From positions 377,499 to 441,498 of IMG/VR virus record IMGVR_UViG_3300029922_000001: a stretch of 64,000 bases of DNA, one strand, 5' to 3'. The notes beneath the pieces were generated by a model. That model was not told where the DNA came from and did no database searches. It was given only the letters and a program-made list of their open reading frames with translations. This document shows, one piece after another, positions 8,472 through 63,587 of this stretch. Each line of letters begins with the position of its first letter. The stretch's first letter is position 1. The translations under genes and the position numbers were made by a program.

Positions 8472-9494
8472 ATGATCAAGTTTTTGGAATATCCGTCAAT
8501 CGAACAATTTCGCTCCGTAATTAAAGATTTTAGTCAGGCTGAATTTATTGGTTTAGATGAAGATGGAAATAAAGTTTATGATCGCACTAAACCTAAGCCA
8601 ATTGTTACTTTTAGAGGGACAGTCAAGCTTCACGGAACCAATAGTTGCGTTGCATATCATAATGGTGAAATTGCAATTCAATCTCGTACACAAAATATTA
8701 CACCAGAGAAAGATAATGCTGGATTTGCTTCATTTGTAATGCAACATAAAGAAGCGTTTTTGAATATTTTTGATCAAATTTTAACAAATCATCCTACGGA
8801 AAAAACGATTTATATGTACGCCGAATGGTGCGGTGGCAACATTCAAAAGGGTGTAGCCATTGCTAACCTTCCTAAATCTTTCTTTATCTTTGATATTTGT
8901 ATTTCTGATACAAATGAAGAAGAGATTACTCGTGAGTGGATTGATATTACTCCATATAGAGATATTGATAATGGTATTTATAATATTTTCGATTATCCTA
9001 ATTGGACTATGGATATTGATTTTAATAACCCAGCTTTAAAACAAAATGATCTAATTGATATTACAATTGGAATCGAAGATGAATGCCCAGTTGGTAAAGC
9101 TTTTGGCTTCTCAGGTACGGGTGAAGGTGCTGTATGGTCAGCAATTCATAATGGAAAGCGTTATATCTTTAAGGTTAAAGGTGAAAAGCACTCAGTAAGT
9201 AAAGTAAAAACCTTAGCTAGTGTAGACGTTGAAAAGCTTAACGGAATTAATGAATTCATTGATTATGCTGTTACCGAAAATCGACTAGATCAAGCTATTG
9301 ATACTGTCTGTAAAAATAGTCTAGATATTCAAAAAATGGGTGATATCATTCGTTGGGTAATGGCAGATGTAATTAAAGAAGAAACCGACACATTAGAATC
9401 TAATGGACTTACTACTAAAGATGTTACTAGTAAAATCGCAGAAAAAGTTCGTAAAATGGTTAGTCTTCGATTGGATAAACAAAGCGGTTTATAA
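8472..9494 (+). CDS. RNA ligase, Rnl2-like (ATP-dependent)
   Basis: Motif I KLHGTN, QSR, YAEWCGGNIQKGV, FFIFDI, GEGAVW, IFKVK. Confidence 0.85.
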   Translation: MIKFLEYPSIEQFRSVIKDFSQAEFIGLDEDGNKVYDRTKPKPIVTFRGTVKLHGTNSCVAYHNGEIAIQSRTQNITPEKDNAGFASFVMQHKEAFLNIFDQILTNHPTEKTIYMYAEWCGGNIQKGVAIANLPKSFFIFDICISDTNEEEITREWIDITPYRDIDNGIYNIFDYPNWTMDIDFNNPALKQNDLIDITIGIEDECPVGKAFGFSGTGEGAVWSAIHNGKRYIFKVKGEKHSVSKVKTLASVDVEKLNGINEFIDYAVTENRLDQAIDTVCKNSLDIQKMGDIIRWVMADVIKEETDTLESNGLTTKDVTSKIAEKVRKMVSLRLDKQSGL

Positions 9495-9540: not shown

Positions 9541-10217
9541 ATGAAAGATAAATGGGGACAAATAATGTGGTATCGCATCCTAACTTTGATAACTGCTCTT
9601 TACGGTTTAGGTACACTATTAGCTATATGTGGGGCTGCGTATATAAAACACGGATTTCAAAATTTATATCATATGCCAGCTTGTTTCGCCATTACTATTG
9701 TACTTTTGACTACATGTGTTTTTGCAGCAAAAAAACTCTTAAAACTTGAGAAAGAATATTTTAGTGATAAACAATGAAACCTAAAGAAAGAATTGAAGAA
9801 AGAATTGAAAAAATAAGAACACCAGAAGAAATAAGAAATGAATTATTTCTTCGTGATCTTCTTATGTGTGGACTTTATAGCCATTTGATGGCACAGGATG
9901 TTATTACTGTGGAATCTATTAAAAAGCAATTCTATAGTGAACTTAAATTCATGAATTTAAGTTTTTATAAACCTAGACCAGAAGAAGACGCCACTGGTTA
10001 TGATCTTTATGAATTCGATGACGCCAAACTGAACTCATTTACGGAAAACGAACTATTTTTACTTAATGGTATGTGTCATACTATATCCAATATCTATATG
10101 GCTATTAATGATGTAGAAAGACAGGCGCAAAGAGCGCAACAAACAGCCGATAATGCTTATCGTGTTGCTAATGATGCAAGATGTACAGCACAAGTTGCTG
10201 GTGGAAGAACGGTATAA
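9541..10217 (+). other. Hypothetical ORFs 9541..9777 (two TM segments) and 9774..10217
   Basis: ATG 9541 follows the repeated promoter; ATGA stop/start overlap at 9774-9777. Confidence 0.65.
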
Positions 10218-10224
10218 TCAAGTC

Positions 10225-10641
10225 ATGAATGAAGACAATCGACCTAAAGTTGGCGTAGCTGCAATGATTAAGCATAATGGCTGTGTCTTACTTGGATTAA
10301 GAGCAGGTAAAAGAGCTAATGGTAAGTGGGGTTTCCCTGGTGGTCATGTGGAATTCGCAGAACATCCAATTGATGCTATTGTTAGAGAAACGAAAGAAGA
10401 AACCAATCTAGATGTTATCATTAGTGATAATTGGGATTTAGGATGGGCAAGCAATGTTTTCGAAAACTCACACTACATTACACTTTATATTGGTTGCGAA
10501 CTAACTAATCAATGTTGGTCAACTGATGTAGTCAGAATGGAACCAGATAAATTCTCAGAATGGAAATGGTTTGATATTAATGAATTGCCAGATAATTTAA
10601 TGTTCGATAATATGTACGAACTTATTAGATCGAACAAATAA
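10225..10641 (+). CDS. Nudix hydrolase (NUDT15/MutT-like)
   Basis: Complete Nudix box GGHVEFAEHPIDAIVRETKEETNL plus PKVGV and MEPDK..EWKWF; ATG 6 nt after TATAAT. Confidence 0.9.
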   Translation: MNEDNRPKVGVAAMIKHNGCVLLGLRAGKRANGKWGFPGGHVEFAEHPIDAIVRETKEETNLDVIISDNWDLGWASNVFENSHYITLYIGCELTNQCWSTDVVRMEPDKFSEWKWFDINELPDNLMFDNMYELIRSNK

Positions 10642-10705
10642 ATCCCCAATAGGAGAATTAGAGGTATACTCTAGACAACACAATCAGGAAAATCTTCAAG
10701 AAAGC

Positions 10706-10734
10706 TTGACAAAAGACTTCAAGATAGGTATAAT
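10706..10734 (+). promoter_or_regulatory. Consensus sigma-70 promoter TTGACA-17-TATAAT upstream of the tmRNA-like RNA
   Basis: TTGACA 10706-10711 and TATAAT 10729-10734, in tandem with a CCCCAA-type promoter at 10641-10670 that has no ATG after it. Confidence 0.85.
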
Positions 10735-10758
10735 GAATGAGTAAGAAAGAAAGCAAGC

Positions 10759-11022
10759 GCCCGATAGCTTGGGTTAACGCAGACTTAACAAGTAGATGTC
10801 TATATTGATTCACTCATTGCGCAATGAGAAGAATAACGGGACACGCTGAATGGAAAATAGATAACTGAGATTAACACAGTTATTTATAAAGAAGACAGTA
10901 GCATAAAGAGAAAGCAAGTGAGGCTTAGAGTACGTAATGTTAATCACCCTCTAAGATAATGAGTAAGTAACGTAGTGGTGTTTGGTGAGTTTGATGTGTA
11001 GGTTCGATGCCTACATCGGGCT
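10759..11022 (+). ncRNA. tmRNA-like / tRNA-like RNA A (264 nt)
   Basis: Acceptor GCCCGAT/ATCGGGC plus U discriminator; T-arm GTAGG-TTCGATG-CCTAC; stemless D-loop AGCTTGGGTTAAC; CAGACTT(10780-86)/GAGTTTG(10987-93) helix; about 200-nt insert. Confidence 0.65.
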
Positions 11023-11026
11023 CGCG

Positions 11027-11722
11027 TTAAATATGTCTATTGTAAATATTTTTAATTAAATTGTTTACAATAGACCAATATTCATCTTTATGAGATTGAG
11101 TTAAGTGTTTGCATTTAGATGAATCTATAGTACAAAATTCTATTCCATTTTCATTACATAAAATAGATTTTTGTTTGTCATTATTTTGAATTTTATTCAA
11201 TTTATCTTGCCCGTAAATTGGTTCATAATGGAAAATACCATTAAGTTCAATAGCTAATTTCAGTGTTGGAAAATAAAAGTCTAATTCTGAATCAATCGCC
11301 TTATGTTTATTGTATTCACAATTCAACTCTGGGTAATGTAATTGTATTTGTTCTTCAAGATAAACCTCTAATTTAGATCGTCTATTGCCATGTGTTTTGT
11401 TTTTATTGTTGTAGGTGGTGGCGCAACTATGATTACAGAAAAATCTTCCAGTATTTGATTTTTTTATTGCTCCTAATCTTACTGTTATTTTTTTACTACA
11501 ACATGAACATTCTTTAGGAACTCTATATTTTATACTTTTTTGTGATGTCATGCACCTTGTAGAACAATAAAGTGGTTGATTTCTTTTAAGAGTTTTATTT
11601 ATTTGAGATTTCTTTCTTATAAAATATAAATTACAAGCATAACAAATTAATTCAATTTGAGGATCACCTTTAAATTGATTTAAATATTCTATTGATATAT
11701 TATTAGATAATGGAGTGTTCAT
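11027..11722 (-). CDS. Free-standing PD-(D/E)XK (Vsr/DUF559-like) endonuclease with Cys-rich Zn-binding N-terminus; probable homing endonuclease
   Basis: CS.RC, CSCC, FCNHSC motifs, then ELDFYFPTLKLAIELNGIFHY; the only long minus-strand gene; sits inside the RNA cluster. Confidence 0.75.
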   Translation of the reverse strand: MNTPLSNNISIEYLNQFKGDPQIELICYACNLYFIRKKSQINKTLKRNQPLYCSTRCMTSQKSIKYRVPKECSCCSKKITVRLGAIKKSNTGRFFCNHSCATTYNNKNKTHGNRRSKLEVYLEEQIQLHYPELNCEYNKHKAIDSELDFYFPTLKLAIELNGIFHYEPIYGQDKLNKIQNNDKQKSILCNENGIEFCTIDSSKCKHLTQSHKDEYWSIVNNLIKNIYNRHI

Positions 11723-11765
11723 AAATCTATCTTCTTAAAATAATCGAAGATTCCTTTTCGATTCC

Positions 11766-11794
11766 TTGACAGAGTATGAAAAACGAGGTATAAT
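11766..11794 (+). promoter_or_regulatory. Consensus sigma-70 promoter TTGACA-17-TATAAT driving the second half of the RNA cluster
   Basis: TTGACA 11766-11771, TATAAT 11789-11794; no ORF downstream until 12458. Confidence 0.85.
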
Positions 11795-11985
11795 ACATCC
11801 ATAAGCCAACGAGATAAATATGGTCAAGTTCCGAAATGGGAACCGGAAAGGCTAATTGCATTACCTTCATCGGGTACGAGACGGATATATATACTACGTT
11901 GATGGTAGGATGAAATTTATTTCATGAATTAGGCTGAACTCCTAATGTATATAATAGGAAAGCTGAAATAATCTTTCCTGCGCAC

Positions 11986-12084
11986 GAGAAAGAAAGCTAT
12001 AAGTGGTACATAGAAAGCGCAGAAGTTTCTCTTTAAATTCAATAGAAAAAGAAGAGTGTATAGGTTCGATTCCTATCTTTCTCA
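11986..12084 (+). ncRNA. tRNA-like RNA B (99 nt), non-canonical anticodon region
   Basis: Acceptor GAGAAAG/CTTTCTC+A; D-like arm CTAT-AAGTGGTAC-ATAG; T-arm ATAGG-TTCGATT-CCTAT; about 40-nt A/T-rich middle. Confidence 0.6.
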
Positions 12085-12093
12085 CGAGAAAAT

Positions 12094-12182
12094 GGGCGTT
12101 TGCCGAAGTTGGTTAACGGCAGTTCCACTATGACATAAAGTTGTAGTGGAGCTGATCAGGGGTTCGAGTCCTCTAGCGCCCA
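12094..12182 (+). ncRNA. tRNA-like RNA C (89 nt) with a 13-14-bp anticodon stem and 5-nt loop
   Basis: Acceptor GGGCGTT/AGCGCCC+A; D arm GCCG-AAGTTGGTTAA-CGGC; GTTCCACTATGAC-ATAAA-GTTGTAGTGGAGC; T-arm AGGGG-TTCGAGT-CCTCT. Confidence 0.75.
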
Positions 12183-12252
12183 CTCCGAGTTGTAACGATG
12201 TCGTAAACCTGTTTAAATGGTAACATACTGGAACGATTTAACGGACAATTCC

Positions 12253-12415
12253 GAGAGGGAAGAATATATAAGCAGTTAGTTAATGGTTATAATAGCATAA
12301 AGTAAGCATGAAGCAATTCATGGGTGAAAGCAGTAGTGAGTTAGAGTCTCAATTATATATTTGTTTAGTAAAGTAGAATTTTAATACAGATTAGTTCGAA
12401 CCTACCCTCTCTCCA
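12253..12415 (+). ncRNA. tRNA-like RNA D (163 nt) ending in CCA
   Basis: GAGAGGG/CCCTCTC acceptor-like stem plus T-CCA; short TAG-TTCGAAC-CTA T-loop; internal GAATATATAA/TTATATATTT helix and CATGAA-GCAA-TTCATG hairpin. Confidence 0.5.
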
Positions 12416-12457
12416 TTTAAAATCCCCCAGCAGACATATTTAAGGTATACTATAATC

Positions 12458-13099
12458 ATGAACCACTACGCTTTTGAATATAATTGTGATTATTACTATG
12501 AATGTCAACATGGCTCAAGTTGTTGTCAAGATGATTATTGTAGATGCGGTAAGATTGTAGATTTAGTCATTACAAAAGTTCCTAATGAAGAAATAATTAA
12601 AGAACTTAAATCAACATTAAAACCCGGTAAAAGACCTAAGCCTATTTGGTCAGATATAGAGAATTATTGTATCGAAAGATTGTTTGTTATTCATAAACTA
12701 TACAAACCAGAAAAGTACGATATCGCCATAGAAGGTGGTTATTATGGTCAAGAATTAGGTGATGCCTATTTTGCATATAACGATGATGTCAAATTTTATG
12801 ATGATGCAAGAGAAATGTTAGCTCTTAATGATAATGATAAAATTAGATTTATCTTAAATAAGGAATATGGTTATATCTCTGATGATTTAAAAAATACTGA
12901 ATTTTTTATTGAATATATTCAATATAGTGATATCTTAACACCAATTGATCTTCGAAGATGTAATGGTGAATCTTATAGTTATAGCGATATTATTGGAATA
13001 TATAAATTAATTGGTGATAAATATAGAATTATAGACGGTCATCATAGATGGCTTGCCGCTAAAGACGAAACCATAGTTAAGGTAATCTGTTATTTTTGA
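12458..13099 (+). CDS. Protein with Cys-rich N-terminus and C-terminal ParB/Srx-like motif
   Basis: CQHG..CCQDDYCRC N-terminus; YRIIDGHHRWLA at the C-terminus. Confidence 0.6.
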   Translation: MNHYAFEYNCDYYYECQHGSSCCQDDYCRCGKIVDLVITKVPNEEIIKELKSTLKPGKRPKPIWSDIENYCIERLFVIHKLYKPEKYDIAIEGGYYGQELGDAYFAYNDDVKFYDDAREMLALNDNDKIRFILNKEYGYISDDLKNTEFFIEYIQYSDILTPIDLRRCNGESYSYSDIIGIYKLIGDKYRIIDGHHRWLAAKDETIVKVICYF

Positions 13100-18165: not shown

Positions 18166-19012
18166 ATGGCAATAACTGATACAGTAGAATCACTTTCACA
18201 ACAATTGCAGGACTTAAAAAATGAGATGGCTCAGCAAATTGGCACAATAAGTGGTAATCAGCAAAATGCTATTAATTCTGCCATTAGTGTTTATGTTACT
18301 GATTTACAAAATGCAATAGATACTCATGTTGCTGAAATTGCCGCTTTAAATTCCGCTCATGCTGCTGAGATATCAAAGTTAAAATCAGACTATGATAAAG
18401 AGATATCCTTAATAGAATCATTACGTTGTGAGGAACGTAATGCGCTTCAGACTACGTATAATAATATGGTCATTCAGAAAGACGCAGCGAAAGCGAATGT
18501 TGAATTTACGTTAGGAACTCAAATAGATAATTTAAAGAACAGTGTTATTGAGTTAAGTAATTCGGTCACAAAATTAAATAATGTTATCAAGGGTAAAGAT
18601 TCGAAAATCATTGAGTTATTGAACGCATCTAAGGTAAATCTTAGTTGATTGAACCTATAATAGATTGATGATGTTAACAGACTTCGGAGTTTTCCCCACC
18701 TTACAAATCCTTGAAGGTGTATGGCTAGAATTACGAAATTCGAAAGGAGTTACTAAATTATATCCTCTTTTAGAGGACGAATTAATATCCTCAGATTACA
18801 CAGCACTAGATCCAATAGTATTACATCCTGGTAAATATTGGATAACGATATTCAATGACAGTACACCTATTGTTAATGATATCTTATCTATTGATGTTGA
18901 GTGCATATTGTTTAATTACAAGATAGATTATCAAAAAGATCGTGAAGTAACTTTAAGTAAGAGTTTATTTATAGGTACTGAGGAAGAGTGGTATTGCGAA
19001 ATGGAGATTTAA
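18166..19012 (+). other. Coiled-coil protein 18166..18648 and hypothetical 18665..19012
   Basis: Heptad-like composition in the first; operon-like packing. Confidence 0.65.
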
Positions 19013-19647
19013 GTTTGGGTAGTTTTCAATTACATTCAGAGATTAGTAAATCTTTTGTAAATGGTCCAACTGAGAGTGGTCGTTATGTATTCTGGGTACA
19101 GGGTTGTCCCTTTGCGTGTCCTGGTTGTTTCAATCCTAGTACTTGGGCATTTACTGGTGGTTATTTAAAGACAGTAGAAGAGTTAGTAAAAGATATATTA
19201 GCGAGTGGTTGTGATGGTTTAACTATTAGTGGTGGTGAGCCATTATTACAGCGAGAGGCGTTATTGGAATTAATAATTCAATTAGAGCCATATGTATTAC
19301 AAGGAATATTAAAATACGGAATTATTTGTTATAGTGGTTTTGAGATCGAAGAGGTTGAGAAATTCGAAAGATCGGAAGAACTACTAGGACTGCTTGATGT
19401 TTTAATTGACGGGAAATTTGTAGAAAATTTAAAGACAGTAGATTCTATAGCTGGAAGTTCTAATCAACGATTTCATTTTTCGAAAAAGGAAGATAGGGGT
19501 AATTGTATTATTACTTTATCTGACATAGAAGAAATTGATAAAGGTGTTGAAATTCATTCTAGTTCTTTAGAAAAAACTGTACAAATAACAGGCTTCCCCA
19601 ATATAGACCGCAGATTTTTAAAGTCAATAGGTTTAACAGTGAAGTAA
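18988..19647 (+). CDS. Radical SAM 4Fe-4S protein, NrdG-like (anaerobic RNR activase family)
   Basis: R..FWVQGCPFACPGCFNP.TW (CxxxCxxC), GLTISGGEPLLQ, DVLIDGKF, GSSNQR. Start uncertain. Confidence 0.85.
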   Translation: MVLRNGDLSLGSFQLHSEISKSFVNGPTESGRYVFWVQGCPFACPGCFNPSTWAFTGGYLKTVEELVKDILASGCDGLTISGGEPLLQREALLELIIQLEPYVLQGILKYGIICYSGFEIEEVEKFERSEELLGLLDVLIDGKFVENLKTVDSIAGSSNQRFHFSKKEDRGNCIITLSDIEEIDKGVEIHSSSLEKTVQITGFPNIDRRFLKSIGLTVK

Positions 19648-25271: not shown

Positions 25272-26324
25272 ATGTTTAATGTAGAAAATCTTGAGAAAAT
25301 GGTTACTGAGGGATATATTCACAAGATTCCTCATGAAAATGGATTATATCATCTATTAAATTATACGCCTTTGGCTGCGTTCAAAAAGGTGTGGAATTTT
25401 GAAACTCTTAATAGTCGTGGTACGGTTATTGATAATGAATACAATATCATTTCAAAACCTATGGAAAAATTTTTTAATGATTTCGAAGTCACTGAAGGTT
25501 TAATTCCTTATCATCTTCCATTTGATGCATTTACAAAATTGGACGGTTCTTGTATCATTGTGAGACGATTAGGTGATGAACTTCTTGTGAACACTCGTGG
25601 CTCATTTAAATCACCGCAATCACAAATGGCTCATTTATTGTTAAAAGAAAAGTATAACATTAATGATTTTGATCCAAATTACACTTATATTTTCGAATAT
25701 ATCGGGTTAGAAAATCGTATTGTGGTGTTATATAAAGAAAGCGATGTTGTTCTTTTAACAATGTATGATATGCGAACATTAGAAGAAGTTGAATATGATC
25801 AATTCCCTAAACATTTCAATATTGTTAAGCGATATGATGGTCTTGATATTGAAACAATGAAATCATTAGACATTCCAAATGAAGAAGGTTTTGTTGTTAG
25901 ATTTTCTAACGGTTTCCGTATGAAACTGAAGATGAAAACTTATATGTCACTTCATGGAATTGTTACAGGATTGAGTTCTAGAAAAGTTTGGGAATTAATG
26001 AAAGATGGAAAATCTCTAGAAGAAATTGCATCTGCTTTACCAGATGAATTTTATGAATTCGCAACTAAAACAAAAACACAACTTCAGGATAAGTTTGATG
26101 CAATTGAAAGCAAGGTGCAGATTGCTCAGATGGGACTTGCGTTCGCAGGTTTAACTGAGCGAAAGGATAAAGCATTGTGGATTCAGGCTAATGCTAAGGA
26201 TGTTGCACCATACATGTATGCATGGCTTGATGGTAAGGATTTCACCGCTGGTATTTGGAAGTCAATCTATCCTCCATATATCAGCCCTTTTGAAGAAAGA
26301 GCTAAGTTAACAGGAGAGAACTAA
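25272..26324 (+). CDS. RNA ligase, T4 Rnl1 (RnlA)-like
   Basis: LNYT...W.....SRG.VID, KP.EKFFN, motif I KLDGS, TRGSF.S.Q, FEY....NRIVV.Y, EEGFVV, RMKLK. Confidence 0.85.
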   Translation: MFNVENLEKMVTEGYIHKIPHENGLYHLLNYTPLAAFKKVWNFETLNSRGTVIDNEYNIISKPMEKFFNDFEVTEGLIPYHLPFDAFTKLDGSCIIVRRLGDELLVNTRGSFKSPQSQMAHLLLKEKYNINDFDPNYTYIFEYIGLENRIVVLYKESDVVLLTMYDMRTLEEVEYDQFPKHFNIVKRYDGLDIETMKSLDIPNEEGFVVRFSNGFRMKLKMKTYMSLHGIVTGLSSRKVWELMKDGKSLEEIASALPDEFYEFATKTKTQLQDKFDAIESKVQIAQMGLAFAGLTERKDKALWIQANAKDVAPYMYAWLDGKDFTAGIWKSIYPPYISPFEERAKLTGEN

Positions 26325-62529: not shown

Positions 62530-62684
62530 GAAATCTAAGGAGAAGGGGCGAAAGCTCCTTTTCCCTATTTTCTTAGTTTGGGTCTATCTATACACTAATT
62601 AAGAGTAAGACTATCATCTAGAATAATTGCAATATTGATTCAATTAGAAATCCCCAATGAGTCAAGGCAAGGTATACTATGTTC

Positions 62685-63587
62685 ATGGCACAATCGAAAG
62701 ACACACCGAGAGACGTAGTAGAGAAACTTCTTGAACTGACAAAAGGCGACTTACTTCCTTGGAATTGCCCTTGGATGCGACGACAACCTAAGAATCCAAT
62801 TAGTGGTACGCGATATCGCGGAATCAATTGGTTACTTCTAACTTGGAAGATGGGCGAATTTGATGGAGAAAACCGATTCGTCACCTACAAGCAGTTGCAA
62901 GAATTCTCCAAGAAGCAAGTCAAGTCGATGTTTATTAAGGCAGGTTCTAAGGGAAGCATGATCATTAAATACGGAATGTTCCAAAAAGATAAGGACATGG
63001 GAAATGGCACTATCAAGGAAGTTTCAATACCGTACATGCAAACGTGGTCCGTGTTTAGTGTTACTCAAGTAGACGGTTGGGATATCCCAAATACTGAAAC
63101 TTATGGCACAAAAGCCCTTCCTGAAGTCAATGCACTAATTCAAAAAATGGGCATTACTGTCAAGAGCGGGAATCAAGCCGCATATTCACCTAGTGGCGAT
63201 TATCTGATTATGCCACCCGCTGATACGTTTAAGTCACCAGAATTGCATCTGGCTGTTGCCATCCATGAACTGATTCATTGTAGTGGACATAAGGACCGCT
63301 TGAACCGAAAGAGTATGGAAGAGGGCAAAGACCAGAAATATGCAACTGAGGAAATGGTTGCGGAAATTGGAGTAGCTATCGCGATGGCAGAACTTGGAGT
63401 AGAGTATCAAATTCAACAATCTGCTGATTACATTAAGGGGTGGTGGAGTGTGATTCAATCCAACCCTAAGAACTTTATATGGGCTGTAAGTCAAGCCCAA
63501 AAAGCAGTAGAATACGTTCTTGGAACCACTATCGAAACGGTTGAATTAACAGAATCAGGAACCGAAAGTTTCGCCTACGTAGGTTAA
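62685..63587 (+). CDS. ardC: ArdC-like ssDNA-binding antirestriction protein with zincin-like domain
   Basis: PW..PW, N..SG..YRGIN...L, FVTYKQ, G.KG, A.Y.P..D...MP....F, HELIH.SGH..RLNR, YA.EE.VAEIG, SA.YI..W. Confidence 0.9.
   Translation: MAQSKDTPRDVVEKLLELTKGDLLPWNCPWMRRQPKNPISGTRYRGINWLLLTWKMGEFDGENRFVTYKQLQEFSKKQVKSMFIKAGSKGSMIIKYGMFQKDKDMGNGTIKEVSIPYMQTWSVFSVTQVDGWDIPNTETYGTKALPEVNALIQKMGITVKSGNQAAYSPSGDYLIMPPADTFKSPELHLAVAIHELIHCSGHKDRLNRKSMEEGKDQKYATEEMVAEIGVAIAMAELGVEYQIQQSADYIKGWWSVIQSNPKNFIWAVSQAQKAVEYVLGTTIETVELTESGTESFAYVG

What the first reader, a model, noticed from the sequence alone, without database searches (positions are those of the whole stretch)
10641..12420. Cluster of four tRNA-mimic RNAs, each with a differently remodelled anticodon domain
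Seen: four elements (264, 99, 89 and 163 nt) keep an acceptor stem and TTCGA T-loop, the parts read by RNase P, CCA-adding enzyme and EF-Tu, but none has a normal 7-nt anticodon loop. They are transcribed from consensus sigma-70 promoters with no ORFs, whereas the phage's one normal tRNA lies elsewhere (36106). Inference: a dedicated system of tRNA-shaped decoys or regulators, e.g. baits for host anticodon nucleases (PrrC/RloC/PARIS-type) or modulators of stringent response or translation. An Rnl2-like ligase lies about 1.3 kb upstream.
Basis: partly seen in the sequence, partly recalled or inferred. Interest (0 to 1): 0.8.

Follow-up and report, generated by a model that had tools for sequence, protein, structure and literature searches.

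The report
Phage operon of non-decoding tRNA-shaped RNAs
A 441-kb peat phage carries a strongly promoted cluster of tRNA-derived RNAs that cannot read codons, and at least one of them is trimmed and CCA-tailed like a tRNA and accumulates in environmental RNA, much like the unexplained stable RNAs C and D of phage T4.

Summary
The four elements are real. E1 (10759-11023), E2 (11986-12084) and E3 (12094-12182) each have a perfect 7-bp acceptor stem, a 5-bp T stem and a TTCGA loop. E4 (12253-12415) is weaker, with a 3-bp T stem. None has a 5-bp stem with a 7-nt anticodon loop.

Two of the only six perfect sigma-70 consensus promoters in the 441-kb genome drive the cluster.

Contigs from four metatranscriptomes cover E1 alone. 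They break at 10759 and 11023. In two runs a non-templated CA follows 11023. E1 is therefore 5'-processed, CCA-tailed, unspliced and stable.

The cluster is not a unique "dedicated system":
- The genome has 22-25 tRNA genes, a tmRNA and a Ro60 (TROVE) gene.
- It also has Rnl1-, Rnl2- and PNK-like genes.
- Six other tRNA genes are interrupted by a hairpin. Removing the hairpin restores a canonical loop of the isotype expected from context, and the junctions have RNase III-like geometry.

E1 and E2 cannot be restored in this way. E3 can only be restored with an aberrant junction. E3 is a tRNA-Val body with a 14-bp arm.

Best reading: these are non-decoding tRNA-body mimics matured by the tRNA pathway, like T4 RNA C and D. 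A decoy role is possible but untested, and bait for anticodon nucleases specifically is unlikely. No orthologues were found.

The parts
10706..10734 (+). Promoter P1: TTGACA, 17-nt spacer, TATAAT, 12 of 12 matches. It lies about 17-18 nt upstream of the E1 5' end once a start site about 7 nt after the -10 is assumed.
   Evidence: Only 6 such sites occur in 441 kb against about 1.2 expected, and 4 of the 6 precede tRNA or tRNA-like operons.
10759..11023 (+). E1: a 265-nt tRNA-shaped RNA. Acceptor GCCCGAT/ATCGGGC, discriminator U, T arm GTAGG-TTCGATG-CCTAC, a weak D arm with GG, and about 195 nt in place of the anticodon loop. Position 11023 is the templated first C of the CCA.
   Evidence: RNA contigs from 4 metatranscriptomes cover it, and contigs from different runs break at 10759 and at 11023. 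A non-templated CA follows 11023 in 2 runs, and no contig skips the insert. No Rfam family matches at E<=10.
11027..11722 (-). HNH homing-endonuclease ORF (231 aa), convergent with E1. It splits the RNA cluster in two.
   Evidence: PHROG 559 and 9084; ORF list. Phage T4 has the segB homing endonuclease at the same kind of place in its tRNA cluster.
11766..11794 (+). Promoter P2: perfect sigma-70 consensus with a 17-nt spacer.
11797..11985 (+). ORF-free leader of the P2 transcript. It holds several hairpins and two internal copies of the genome's inter-tRNA spacer motif (CGAGA followed by an AT-rich run, near 11810 and 11871). It looks like degenerate tRNA slots.
   Evidence: Sequence, folds, and the motif as defined on the true tRNA clusters. 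No tRNA match.
11986..12084 (+). E2: a 99-nt class-II-like tRNA shape. Acceptor GAGAAAG/CTTTCTC, discriminator A73, a 4-bp D stem, a 5-bp stem closing a 9-nt loop, a long variable arm, and T arm ATAGG-TTCGATT-CCTAT. The trailer is CGAG.
   Evidence: (tRNA-Sec model, 19.1 bits, below threshold).
12094..12182 (+). E3: an 89-nt tRNA-Val body whose anticodon arm is a continuous 13-14-bp helix capped by a 7-9-nt loop.
   Evidence: Rfam tRNA 33.5 bits; fold z = -5.5.
12130..12136 (+). The heptad A-U-GAC-A-U, a Val-type anticodon-loop sequence. It sits in the weak upper pairs of the E3 helix, 9 bp from the tRNA body instead of 5.
   Evidence: Sequence and constrained fold. The phage has no other tRNA-Val.
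12184..12252 (+). A 69-nt spacer element closed by a 7-bp stem. It is flanked by the CCGAG motif on both sides and has no T loop.
   Evidence: (z = -0.6, so not significant) and sequence.
12253..12415 (+). E4: a 163-nt element. Acceptor GAGAGGG/CCCTCTC, discriminator U, an encoded CCA, a TTCGAAC loop on a 3-bp stem, a D-arm-like hairpin, and about 85 nt of insert.
   Evidence: (ARAGORN calls it only at the 80% threshold). One 157-nt RNA contig covers 12258-12402 in one run.
8472..9494 (+). Context only: an Rnl2-type RNA ligase (340 aa). A NUDIX hydrolase at 10153-10641 lies directly upstream of P1, and an Rnl1-type ligase lies at 25272-26324.

Best explanation
The locus is a diverged tRNA operon. 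Its products are no longer decoders. They are stable RNAs that mimic the tRNA body, the same kind of molecule as phage T4's RNA C and RNA D.

Proposed mechanism, step by step:
1. Two consensus sigma-70 promoters give strong transcription by the host polymerase. This is inferred from sequence.
2. The acceptor/T-arm minihelix and the D/T elbow send the transcripts into the host tRNA maturation pathway. The 5' leader is cut exactly at acceptor position +1. The end is shown for E1; RNase P as the enzyme is inferred.
3. The 3' trailer is cut after N73-C, and the host CCA-adding enzyme completes the CCA. The non-templated CA is shown for E1. The enzyme is inferred, and the phage encodes none of its own.
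4. The full-length RNA accumulates. This is shown for E1, weakly indicated for E4, and not shown for E2 and E3.
5. The anticodon domain is replaced by a 195-nt insert, a 9-nt loop, a 14-bp helix or an 85-nt insert. The RNAs therefore cannot reach a codon with tRNA geometry (inferred).
6. They most likely act by occupying or recruiting a protein that reads the tRNA body or its CCA end. Candidates are tRNA-directed defence nucleases, the phage's own Ro60 (as a Y-RNA-like adaptor), and a synthetase or modification enzyme. Which partner is used is not known.
For: Anatomy.

Promoters: both are perfect, and perfect consensus sites in this genome mostly precede tRNA operons.

RNA evidence: contigs from four metatranscriptomes cover E1, with contigs from different runs breaking at 10759 and at 11023. 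The letters just outside do not match the genome. After 11023 two independent runs read CA where the genome has GC. No contig skips the insert. The flanking NUDIX, HNH and downstream ORFs are not covered, apart from one 35-nt low-identity partial match in the HNH ORF.

Shared processing: E2 has, and E3 nearly has, the N73-C(C)GAG trailer motif of the genome's true tRNAs.

Not restorable: under the junction rule that restores six other interrupted tRNAs of this genome, E1 and E2 yield no canonical loop. E3 does so only with a -5 or -7 offset.

Selection on E3: it keeps a tRNA-Val minihelix within 1-2 of 32 positions of bacterial tRNA-Val, and its D stem is changed on both strands of two pairs that still pair.

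Precedent: T4 has the same layout, with nudE upstream, then tRNAs, a homing endonuclease, tRNA-Arg, rnaD and rnaC. T4 rnaC has a canonical T arm. The roles of RNA C and D are still unknown (PMC3014915, PMC9697503).
Against: No orthologue of any element was found, so there is no covariation support.

The folds of E1, E2 and E4 are not better than shuffles.

The RNA evidence comes from assembled contigs of metatranscriptomes. A spliced product of about 70 nt would not be assembled, so splicing is not excluded.

E2 and E3 were not seen in RNA at all. E4 rests on a single read-length contig.

The extra letters after the CA are unexplained, including one contig that joins 11023 to 10759 through 8 letters.

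No binding partner has been shown.
Confidence: 0.6

Rival explanations
1. The elements are intron-containing pre-tRNAs, like the 'enigmatic introns' of Lak megaphage tRNAs. The inserts would be cut out and the halves joined by the phage's Rnl1- or Rnl2-type ligase, giving decoders such as tRNA-Val(GAC) from E3. The full-length E1 seen in RNA would then be a precursor.
For: Six other tRNA genes of this genome carry hairpins of 17-31 nt in the anticodon loop. Removing the hairpin gives canonical loops (C/U-U-NNN-A-A/G) of the isotype expected from context: Leu UAG in the Leu cluster, Lys UUU in the Lys cluster, Thr UGU in the Thr cluster, Cys GCA next to Cys with U73, and Gly GCC and Gly UCC with U73. 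The two junctions lie 2 nt (4 cases) or 3 nt (2 cases) apart across the helix, which is RNase III-like geometry. The phage has Rnl1-, Rnl2- and PNK-like genes. E3 keeps a U-GAC-A heptad, and the phage has no other tRNA-Val. Lak phages have a class-I tRNA-Tyr with an insert (PMC6784885).
Against: E1 and E2 give no canonical loop for any single deletion. E3 gives one only with junctions 5-7 bp apart, or with an anticodon stem of 8-9 bp. No group I core is present. The phage has no splicing endonuclease, RtcB or RNase III gene. The species assembled in all four runs is unspliced E1 carrying CCA, and no contig shows a skipping joint.
Confidence: 0.15
2. This is the first reader's specific proposal: the RNAs are baits that soak up host anticodon nucleases of the PrrC, RloC or PARIS type.
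For: tRNA-targeting defences and phage tRNA counter-measures are well documented (PMC10264068, PMC11464382, PMC11555353, found). The RNAs are tRNA-shaped, strongly promoted and, for E1, abundant. E3 still displays a Val-type heptad. The phage invests in tRNA repair enzymes.
Against: Anticodon nucleases read the anticodon loop and its modifications, and a stabilised stem inhibits PrrC (PMC3014915, section on ACNase specificity). In these RNAs that loop is deleted, enlarged or base-paired. No defence gene or host is known for this phage.
Confidence: 0.1
3. The RNAs are Y-RNA-like adaptors for the phage's own Ro60 protein. The tRNA-like module would tether Ro60 to another enzyme, as bacterial YrlA does.
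For: The genome encodes a TROVE/Ro60 protein (117.8 bits). No Rfam Y RNA was found within about 8 kb upstream or 4 kb downstream of it. YrlA RNAs mimic tRNA, and M. smegmatis YrlA is cut by RNase P and receives CCA (PMC4201824), which is the behaviour E1 shows. Phage Ro60 proteins bind phage Y-like RNAs (PMC12135203). E3 contains GCCGAAG, which fits the GNCGAAN0-1G motif.
Against: The cluster lies 373 kb from the Ro60 gene, whereas YrlA genes lie within 4 kb on the same strand. The topology is opposite: here the ends are in the acceptor stem, not in a Ro-binding stem. There is no Rfam YrlA or Y_RNA hit. The GCCGAAG of E3 sits in the D arm, and GGCGAA occurs in the D arm of several of this phage's other tRNAs.
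Confidence: 0.1
4. The elements are leftovers. They would be decaying duplicate tRNA genes, or processing punctuation, that are still transcribed and trimmed but have no function of their own.
For: No orthologues were found. The folds of E1, E2 and E4 are unexceptional. The leader and the spacer look like degenerate tRNA slots. A homing endonuclease has invaded the cluster.
Against: The acceptor and T arms of E1-E3 are perfect, the promoters are perfect, and the E3 helix is a perfect 13-14 bp. Random decay does not build long complementary arms. E1 is one of the few transcripts of this phage that assembles in environmental RNA.
Confidence: 0.08

Closest known systems
Phage T4 RNA C (species 1) and RNA D (species 2), stable RNAs of the T4 tRNA cluster
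   Same: They are ORF-free stable RNAs encoded at the end of a phage tRNA operon. A homing endonuclease gene sits inside the cluster and a NUDIX gene lies nearby. T4 rnaC has a canonical T arm (CCGGG-UUCGAAU-CCCGG) next to an acceptor-like closing stem, with long extra arms in between. Like E2, it gives only a weak match to the tRNA-Sec model. Their function is still unknown (PMC3014915, PMC9697503).
   Different: No sequence similarity was seen or expected. E1 is twice as long. The T4 rnaC acceptor stem has mismatches, whereas those of E1-E3 are perfect. Here the RNAs have their own consensus promoters rather than following true tRNAs. That RNase III cuts T4 species 1 RNA is recalled from memory only and was not checked.
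'Enigmatic introns' in tRNA genes of Lak megaphages (Devoto et al. 2019, PMC6784885)
   Same: They are huge-phage tRNA genes with non-group-I inserts in the anticodon loop. They include a class-I tRNA-Tyr(GTA)-like gene, and their splicing route is unknown. The authors remark that such tRNAs may be common in large phages. Six other genes of this genome, and genes in at least three other large phage records, fit this description.
   Different: Removing a Lak insert restores a scorable tRNA. E1 and E2 cannot be restored, and E3 only aberrantly. Here there is RNA evidence that the insert-bearing form, E1, is end-matured and stable.
Bacterial Y RNAs of the YrlA type with Ro60/Rsr
   Same: They are tRNA mimics with D and T arms and an acceptor-like stem. 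M. smegmatis YrlA is cut by RNase P and receives CCA. This phage encodes a Ro60 protein.
   Different: The location, the topology and the Rfam model all fail for E1-E4 (see the membership test).
tmRNA
   Same: It has an acceptor/T-arm tRNA-like domain formed by the two ends, a large insert in place of the anticodon arm, RNase P processing and a CCA end.
   Different: ARAGORN and Rfam find no tmRNA here. The phage has a separate tmRNA at genome 293574-293927. E1 has a D arm, and no tag reading frame or pseudoknot series was recognised.
Bacterial tRNA genes with group I introns
   Same: They carry an insert of about 200 nt in the anticodon loop of a bacterial-type tRNA gene. Homing endonucleases are often associated with them.
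   Different: No group I core was detected at E<=10. The precursor form carries CCA and accumulates.

Membership tests
Canonical tRNA (Rfam RF00005) | Score at or above the gathering threshold of the covariance model | tested here: inconclusive
   E3 scores 33.5 bits against a cut-off of 29, but the whole anticodon arm is treated as a 33-nt insertion. E1, E2 and E4 give no match.
Canonical tRNA (Rfam RF00005) | A 5-bp anticodon stem closing a 7-nt loop with U33 and a purine at position 37 | tested here: not met
   E1 has about a 195-nt insert, E2 a 9-nt loop, E3 a continuous 13-14-bp helix, and E4 about an 85-nt insert.
Canonical tRNA (Rfam RF00005) | A 7-bp acceptor stem, a T arm with a TTCRA loop, and a D loop with GG | tested here: met
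   E1-E3 score 12/12 pairs. E4 has only a 3-bp T stem.
tRNA interrupted by a group I intron | A group I catalytic core in the insert | tested here: not met
   No Rfam intron family matches at E<=10 on 10500-12600 or on 10740-11040.
Archaeal/eukaryal-type tRNA intron | A splicing endonuclease (tRNA_int_endo) and an RtcB- or Trl1-type joining enzyme | tested here: not met
   PF01974 and PF01139 are absent from the phage genome. The host is unknown, so this could not be tested for the host.
Archaeal/eukaryal-type tRNA intron | A bulge-helix-bulge motif, or an insert at position 37/38 | tested here: not met
   The E3 helix has no bulges. The only canonical restoration of E3 puts the insert at 31/32 or 32/33. 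Reading E3 at 37/38 needs an 8-9-bp stem.
Lak-type phage tRNA with a removable insert | Deleting one insert restores a canonical anticodon loop that fits the tRNA body | tested here: not met
   E1 and E2 have no solution. E3 gives Tyr(GUA), which does not fit its tRNA-Val body. Six other genes of the genome do meet this feature.
tmRNA | Detection by the tmRNA models, and a tag reading frame | tested here: not met
   ARAGORN and Rfam find none in the window. The genome's tmRNA lies elsewhere.
YrlA / bacterial Y RNA | Encoded within about 4 kb of the Ro60 gene, on the same strand | tested here: not met
   The Ro60 gene is at genome 14878-16542. The cluster is at genome 388257-389913.
YrlA / bacterial Y RNA | The 5' and 3' ends pair in a Ro-binding stem carrying GNCGAAN0-1G | tested here: not met
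   Here the ends pair as an acceptor stem. The only motif match, GCCGAAG at 12102-12108, lies in the D arm of E3 (definition).
YrlA / bacterial Y RNA | [quoted passage not shown] | tested here: met
   E1 has its 5' end at acceptor position +1 and a non-templated CA at its 3' end. The enzymes themselves are inferred.
T4 RNA C/D-like stable RNAs (an informal class) | Non-decoding stable RNAs encoded in a phage tRNA operon and matured with the tRNAs | tested here: met
   Stability and end maturation are shown for E1 only.
T4 RNA C/D-like stable RNAs (an informal class) | Sequence or structural homology to T4 rnaC or rnaD | not tested
   Only the shared T arm and closing-stem architecture was noted. 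No alignment was attempted, because no similarity is expected at this distance.

The most novel reading that the evidence does not exclude
E1-E4 are a new class of phage effector RNA. They would be CCA-tailed and possibly aminoacylated tRNA-body mimics, up to 265 nt long, that neutralise or redirect a tRNA-reading host factor or arm the phage's own Ro60. They would sit beside a second novelty in the same genome: protein-dependent tRNA introns that are cut with RNase III geometry and sealed by phage Rnl1- or Rnl2-type ligases. That would be the first tRNA splicing pathway in a bacterial system that does not use a group I intron.
Probability: 0.2. Interest if true: 0.85.

Novelty: new variant of a known kind. 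Interest (0 to 1): 0.58.

Why it matters
Phage T4's tRNA-cluster RNAs C and D have had no known function for about fifty years. The 'introns' of megaphage tRNAs have been unexplained since 2019.

This locus gives a natural case in which such a molecule, E1, is seen in environmental RNA with tRNA-type ends and a CCA tail. The same genome also offers a clean internal contrast. Six interrupted tRNAs can be restored to canonical form. Four tRNA-shaped RNAs cannot.

That contrast turns two vague puzzles into bench tests:
- Are the restorable tRNAs spliced by a double-strand-specific nuclease plus the phage ligases?
- What protein binds the non-restorable ones?

If the answer is a defence nuclease or the phage Ro60, it would add an RNA-based layer to the conflict between phages and hosts over tRNAs.

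Tried and rejected
1. Orthologues for covariation analysis. None was found by any of these routes:
- megablast and blastn against GenBank phages;
- exact E1 and E3 patterns, and a gapped 'tRNA-Val with insert' pattern, in IMG/VR;
- the E1 pattern in JGI metagenomes, which returned only the source contig, and in 185,579 genomes;
- loci found through the NUDIX protein and through ORF213;
- homologues of ORF213, which have tightly packed ORFs and no RNA cluster upstream.

2. Known RNA families. Nothing matched beyond the E3 tRNA hit.

3. Group I, tmRNA and YrlA readings were rejected (see the membership test).

4. Genes for a splicing endonuclease, RtcB, RNase III and a CCA-adding enzyme are absent from the phage.

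5. Antisense targets. The longest complementarity of any element to the rest of the genome is 13-15 nt, which is near chance.

6. Thermodynamic support. Only E3 stands out.

7. Isotype of E1, E2 and E4 from their minihelices.

8. A Y RNA next to the phage Ro60 gene. An ORF-free, promoter-to-terminator stretch exists, but its fold is unremarkable.

9. The two RNA variants in E1 (10812 A>G and 10894 G>A) fall in predicted unpaired positions. Two sites are too few to count as evidence.


Full report
WHAT THE WINDOW IS. The window is bases 377499-441498 of a 441,498-bp IMG/VR virus record from a peat metagenome. An identical copy of the protein encoded just downstream of the locus sits on a 521,591-bp contig elsewhere, so the record may be incomplete. 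The genome is about 32% G+C. It uses sigma-70-type promoters and carries a tmRNA, so the host is a bacterium.

THE OBSERVATION. Four elements were reported. E1 (10759-11022 to the discriminator), E2 (11986-12084) and E3 (12094-12182) each have a perfect 7-bp acceptor stem directly followed by a perfect 5-bp T stem around a TTCGANN loop. A scan for that signature finds 28 sites in the genome against 3-7 in shuffled genomes, and three of them lie in this 1.8 kb. E3 passes the Rfam tRNA threshold (33.5 bits) with the whole anticodon arm treated as an insertion. Its fold is exceptional (z = -5.5). With introns allowed, ARAGORN calls E1 and E3 at its default threshold and E2 and E4 only at a relaxed one. 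E4 (12253-12415) has a perfect acceptor stem, an encoded U-CCA end and a TTCGAAC loop, but only a 3-bp T stem. Its fold and those of E1 and E2 are not better than shuffles.

None of the four has a 5-bp stem with a 7-nt loop. The two promoters (10706-10734 and 11766-11794) match the consensus 12/12 with 17-nt spacers. Only six such sites exist in 441 kb, against about 1.2 expected. Two drive this locus, and two more precede the tRNA clusters at 7.4 kb and 172 kb.

An HNH homing-endonuclease ORF lies on the minus strand between E1 and E2 (11027-11722). The genome has 22-25 tRNA genes, not one. The second transcript also contains a 190-nt leader and a 69-nt spacer element.

RNA EVIDENCE. Metatranscriptomes from peat, permafrost, a bioreactor and soil hold 6-10% of the locus's sampled words. 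I laid the contigs of four of them on 10600-12500.
- All four have a contig on E1.
- In three runs the contigs break at the predicted ends. Two break at 10759, the first base of the acceptor stem, and two at 11023.
- Beyond those points the contigs carry letters that do not match the genome. After 11023 two independent runs read CA where the genome has GC. With the templated C at 11023, this gives U73-CCA.
- The -10 hexamer ends 25 nt upstream of 10759, so that 5' end is a processing site and not a transcription start.
- No contig skips the 195-nt insert.
- The flanking NUDIX and downstream ORFs are not covered. The HNH ORF has only one 35-nt partial match of low identity.

E1 therefore exists as a discrete, end-matured, CCA-tailed, unspliced RNA of about 267 nt that is abundant enough to assemble. 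One run also has a read-length contig inside E4 (12258-12402). E2 and E3 were not seen. At 89-99 nt they may be lost in such libraries.

Three caveats apply. Contigs show presence, not absence, so a 70-nt spliced product would not assemble. One contig joins 11023 to 10759 through the 8 letters CATTGGGA. This could be a circle, a concatemer, a tandem copy in a variant, or a template-switching artefact, and I cannot tell which. The letters after the CA in the other run are also unexplained.

THE LOCUS IS PART OF A GENOME-WIDE PATTERN. Allowing inserts, ARAGORN and Rfam reveal further long tRNA genes inside ordinary tRNA clusters or standing alone. For six of them I defined the 5-bp anticodon stem and listed every way of joining a prefix and a suffix of the intervening sequence into a 7-nt loop with U33 and a purine at position 37.

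In each case one solution gives the isotype expected from independent context:
- Leu(UAG), in a class-II body with A73, inside the Leu cluster.
- Lys(UUU), with A73, inside the Lys cluster.
- Thr(UGU), inside the Thr cluster.
- Cys(GCA), with U73, next to the normal tRNA-Cys.
- Gly(GCC) and Gly(UCC), with GCGG acceptor stems and U73.

In all six the anticodon is paired with the insert in one continuous helix. The two junctions lie 2 nt (four cases) or 3 nt (two cases, one with a bulged base and one with an internal loop) apart on opposite strands, with a 3' overhang. That is the geometry an RNase III-type cut leaves. Such a cut would give 3'-OH and 5'-phosphate ends, which Rnl1- and Rnl2-type ligases seal. 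The phage encodes an Rnl2-like ligase (8472-9494), an Rnl1-like ligase (25272-26324) and a 303-aa PNK-like ORF. It encodes no RNase III, splicing endonuclease, RtcB or CCA-adding enzyme.

This splicing model is an inference. Part of the regularity follows from the shared C-U-NNN-A-A loop pattern, and no RNA data were available for these genes. Similar long-armed tRNA genes occur in at least three other large phage records, of 501 kb, 199 kb and 43 kb. Lak megaphages were reported in 2019 to have tRNAs with 'enigmatic introns', with the remark that these may be common in large phages (PMC6784885).

HOW THE FOUR ELEMENTS DIFFER FROM THAT CLASS. Under the same enumeration E1 and E2 have no canonical solution at all. 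E3 has only Tyr(GUA), with junctions 5-7 bp apart, and that does not fit its body.

Of 81 sites examined, ARAGORN called a tRNA at 72, and all 72 were tRNA-Val. The E3 minihelix is within 1-2 of 32 positions of those genes. Its D loop is also the tRNA-Val one. Its D stem differs on both strands of two pairs that still pair (read from the sequences).

Inside the long helix, 9 bp from the body instead of 5, sits the heptad A-U-GAC-A-U (12130-12136), a Val-type anticodon-loop sequence. The phage has no other tRNA-Val. E3 is therefore a tRNA-Val whose anticodon arm has been lengthened by about 4 bp and closed over the anticodon by an added 3' strand. With that geometry it cannot place the anticodon in the decoding centre. 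That last step is an inference from the fixed distance between acceptor end and anticodon in tRNA.

E2 is class-II-like (long variable arm, A73) with a 9-nt loop.

E2 carries, and E3 nearly carries, the trailer motif found after the discriminator of the genome's true tRNAs: N73, one or two C, then GAGA and an AT-rich run. The same motif occurs twice in the leader and at the 5' edges of E2 and E4. The whole second transcript thus looks like a tRNA array whose slots have diverged to different degrees.

WHAT IT IS AND HOW IT MOST LIKELY WORKS. The best-supported reading (about 0.6) is a diverged tRNA operon whose products are non-decoding tRNA-body mimics. The steps are:
1. Strong transcription from the two consensus promoters.
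2. Entry into the host tRNA maturation pathway through the acceptor/T minihelix and the elbow.
3. Removal of the 5' leader at position +1.
4. 3' trimming after N73-C and completion of the CCA.
5. Accumulation of the full-length RNA.

The ends and the accumulation are shown for E1. The enzymes are inferred. The extension to E2-E4 is inferred from anatomy and from the shared trailer motif.

The closest known molecules are phage T4's RNA C and RNA D. T4 has the same layout: nudE upstream, then seven tRNAs, the segB homing endonuclease, tRNA-Arg, rnaD and rnaC. T4 rnaC has a canonical T arm next to an acceptor-like closing stem, with long arms in between. The roles of both RNAs are still unknown (PMC3014915, PMC9697503).

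For the downstream function I can only rank the options:
- A competitor or decoy for proteins that read the tRNA body or the CCA end.
- A Y-RNA-like adaptor for the phage's own Ro60.
- A substrate for aminoacylation outside translation.
- Processing punctuation.

The Ro60 idea arises because the genome encodes a TROVE protein with no recognisable Y RNA nearby. Bacterial YrlA RNAs are tRNA mimics, and one of them is cut by RNase P and receives CCA (PMC4201824). However, E1-E4 fail the YrlA tests of location, topology and model match.

Those enzymes read the loop that these RNAs have lost or buried, and a stabilised stem inhibits PrrC (PMC3014915).

RIVALS. Four rival readings remain:
- True introns that are spliced out, at about 0.15. 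This is kept alive by the six restorable genes, the ligases and the Val heptad. It is weakened by the fact that E1 and E2 cannot be restored and by the CCA-tailed unspliced E1.
- Anticodon-nuclease bait, at about 0.1.
- A Ro60 partner, at about 0.1.
- Functionless leftovers, at about 0.08. This is contradicted by the perfect stems, the perfect promoters and the long complementary arm.

LIMITS. No orthologue of any element was found in GenBank phages, IMG/VR, JGI metagenomes or 185,579 genomes. Homologues of the flanking gene have no RNA cluster. There is therefore no covariation evidence, and the internal structures of E1 and E4 are unknown. The RNA evidence is from contigs only.

VERDICT. The general idea of tRNA-shaped, non-decoding RNAs that use the tRNA maturation machinery is supported, and for E1 it is now backed by RNA data. 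The claims of uniqueness and of an anticodon-nuclease target are not supported. This is a new variant of a known but unexplained kind, represented by T4 RNA C and D and by the megaphage tRNA 'introns'. The internal contrast between restorable and non-restorable tRNA genes makes both puzzles testable.

Noticed in passing
genome 14878-16542 (+), outside the window; L095 8379-10043: The phage encodes a TROVE/Ro60 (Rsr-like) protein of about 554 aa (PF05731, 117.8 bits summed). No Rfam Y RNA lies within about 8 kb upstream or 4 kb downstream. Just upstream (L095 8118-8358) are a promoter-like site, about 200 ORF-free nt and a terminator-like hairpin, which could be its Y RNA.
   Followed up: partly
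genome 172713-172810, 245888-245993, 247522-247620, 251433-251524, 253296-253394, 275381-275484 (outside the window): Six tRNA genes carry a 17-31-nt hairpin in the anticodon loop. Removing it restores canonical loops of the isotype expected from context. The junctions are offset 2-3 nt across the helix with a 3' overhang, which is RNase III-like geometry. This suggests a cut-and-ligate tRNA splicing route.
   Followed up: partly
window 12083-12088, 12183-12191 and 12250-12256, and all tRNA clusters of the genome (for example genome 275070-275600, minus strand): A conserved trailer and spacer follows the discriminator of the phage's tRNAs: one or two C, then GAGA, then an AT-rich run ending in AT. 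A partial CCA is thus encoded and must be completed after cleavage. The motif is probably a 3'-processing signal.
   Followed up: partly
window 11023 joined to 10759 (RNA contig of run X17): One metatranscriptome contig joins the 3' end of E1 to its 5' end through the 8 letters CATTGGGA. It could be a circular or concatenated RNA, a tandem copy in a variant genome, or a template-switching artefact. It remains unresolved.
   Followed up: no
window 25272-26324 (+) and genome 287907-288308 (+): An Rnl1-type RNA ligase (PF09511) lies in the window, and a 303-aa PNK-like ORF (AAA_33) lies elsewhere in the genome. Together with the Rnl2-like ligase at 8472-9494 they make a full T4-style RNA repair set.
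   Followed up: partly
genome 172128-172200 and 353602-353673 (+); tmRNA at genome 293574-293927: The genome has two tRNA genes with a CUA anticodon (amber suppressors) and a phage tmRNA. Some genes may be read with TAG recoded. ORFs in the window look intact under the standard bacterial code.
   Followed up: no
genome 354986-355014 and 361154-361182 (+), outside the window: These are the two remaining perfect sigma-70 consensus promoters of the genome. They do not precede known tRNA genes, so further highly expressed RNAs or early genes may start there.
   Followed up: no
genome 274892-274973 and 274985-275068 (-), outside the window: Two paralogous 82-84-nt tRNA-like genes lie at the end of the Leu cluster. 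Their D regions are enlarged. Their anticodon stems differ in sequence but both pair fully (compensatory changes), and their loops read UU-AAG-AA and UU-UAG-AA.
   Followed up: partly
window 12458-13099 (+): An identical copy of this 213-aa protein is recorded on a 521,591-bp contig in another collection. The 441-kb IMG/VR record, scored 100% complete, may be shorter than the real genome.
   Followed up: no
window 62679-63587 (+) and 18988-19647 (+): The first ORF is an ArdC-N plus zincin metallopeptidase protein (anti-restriction type). The second is a small radical-SAM protein (Fer4_12) that resembles QueE or an activase.
   Followed up: no
L049 1644-1783 (198-kb phage record G005); L087 345-448 and 1605-1704 (501-kb record G003); L088 302-412 (record G006): Other large phages also carry tRNA-shaped genes of 100-140 nt with long or complex anticodon arms. 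Several have an encoded CCA, and some lie near an Rnl2-like ligase gene.
   Followed up: partly
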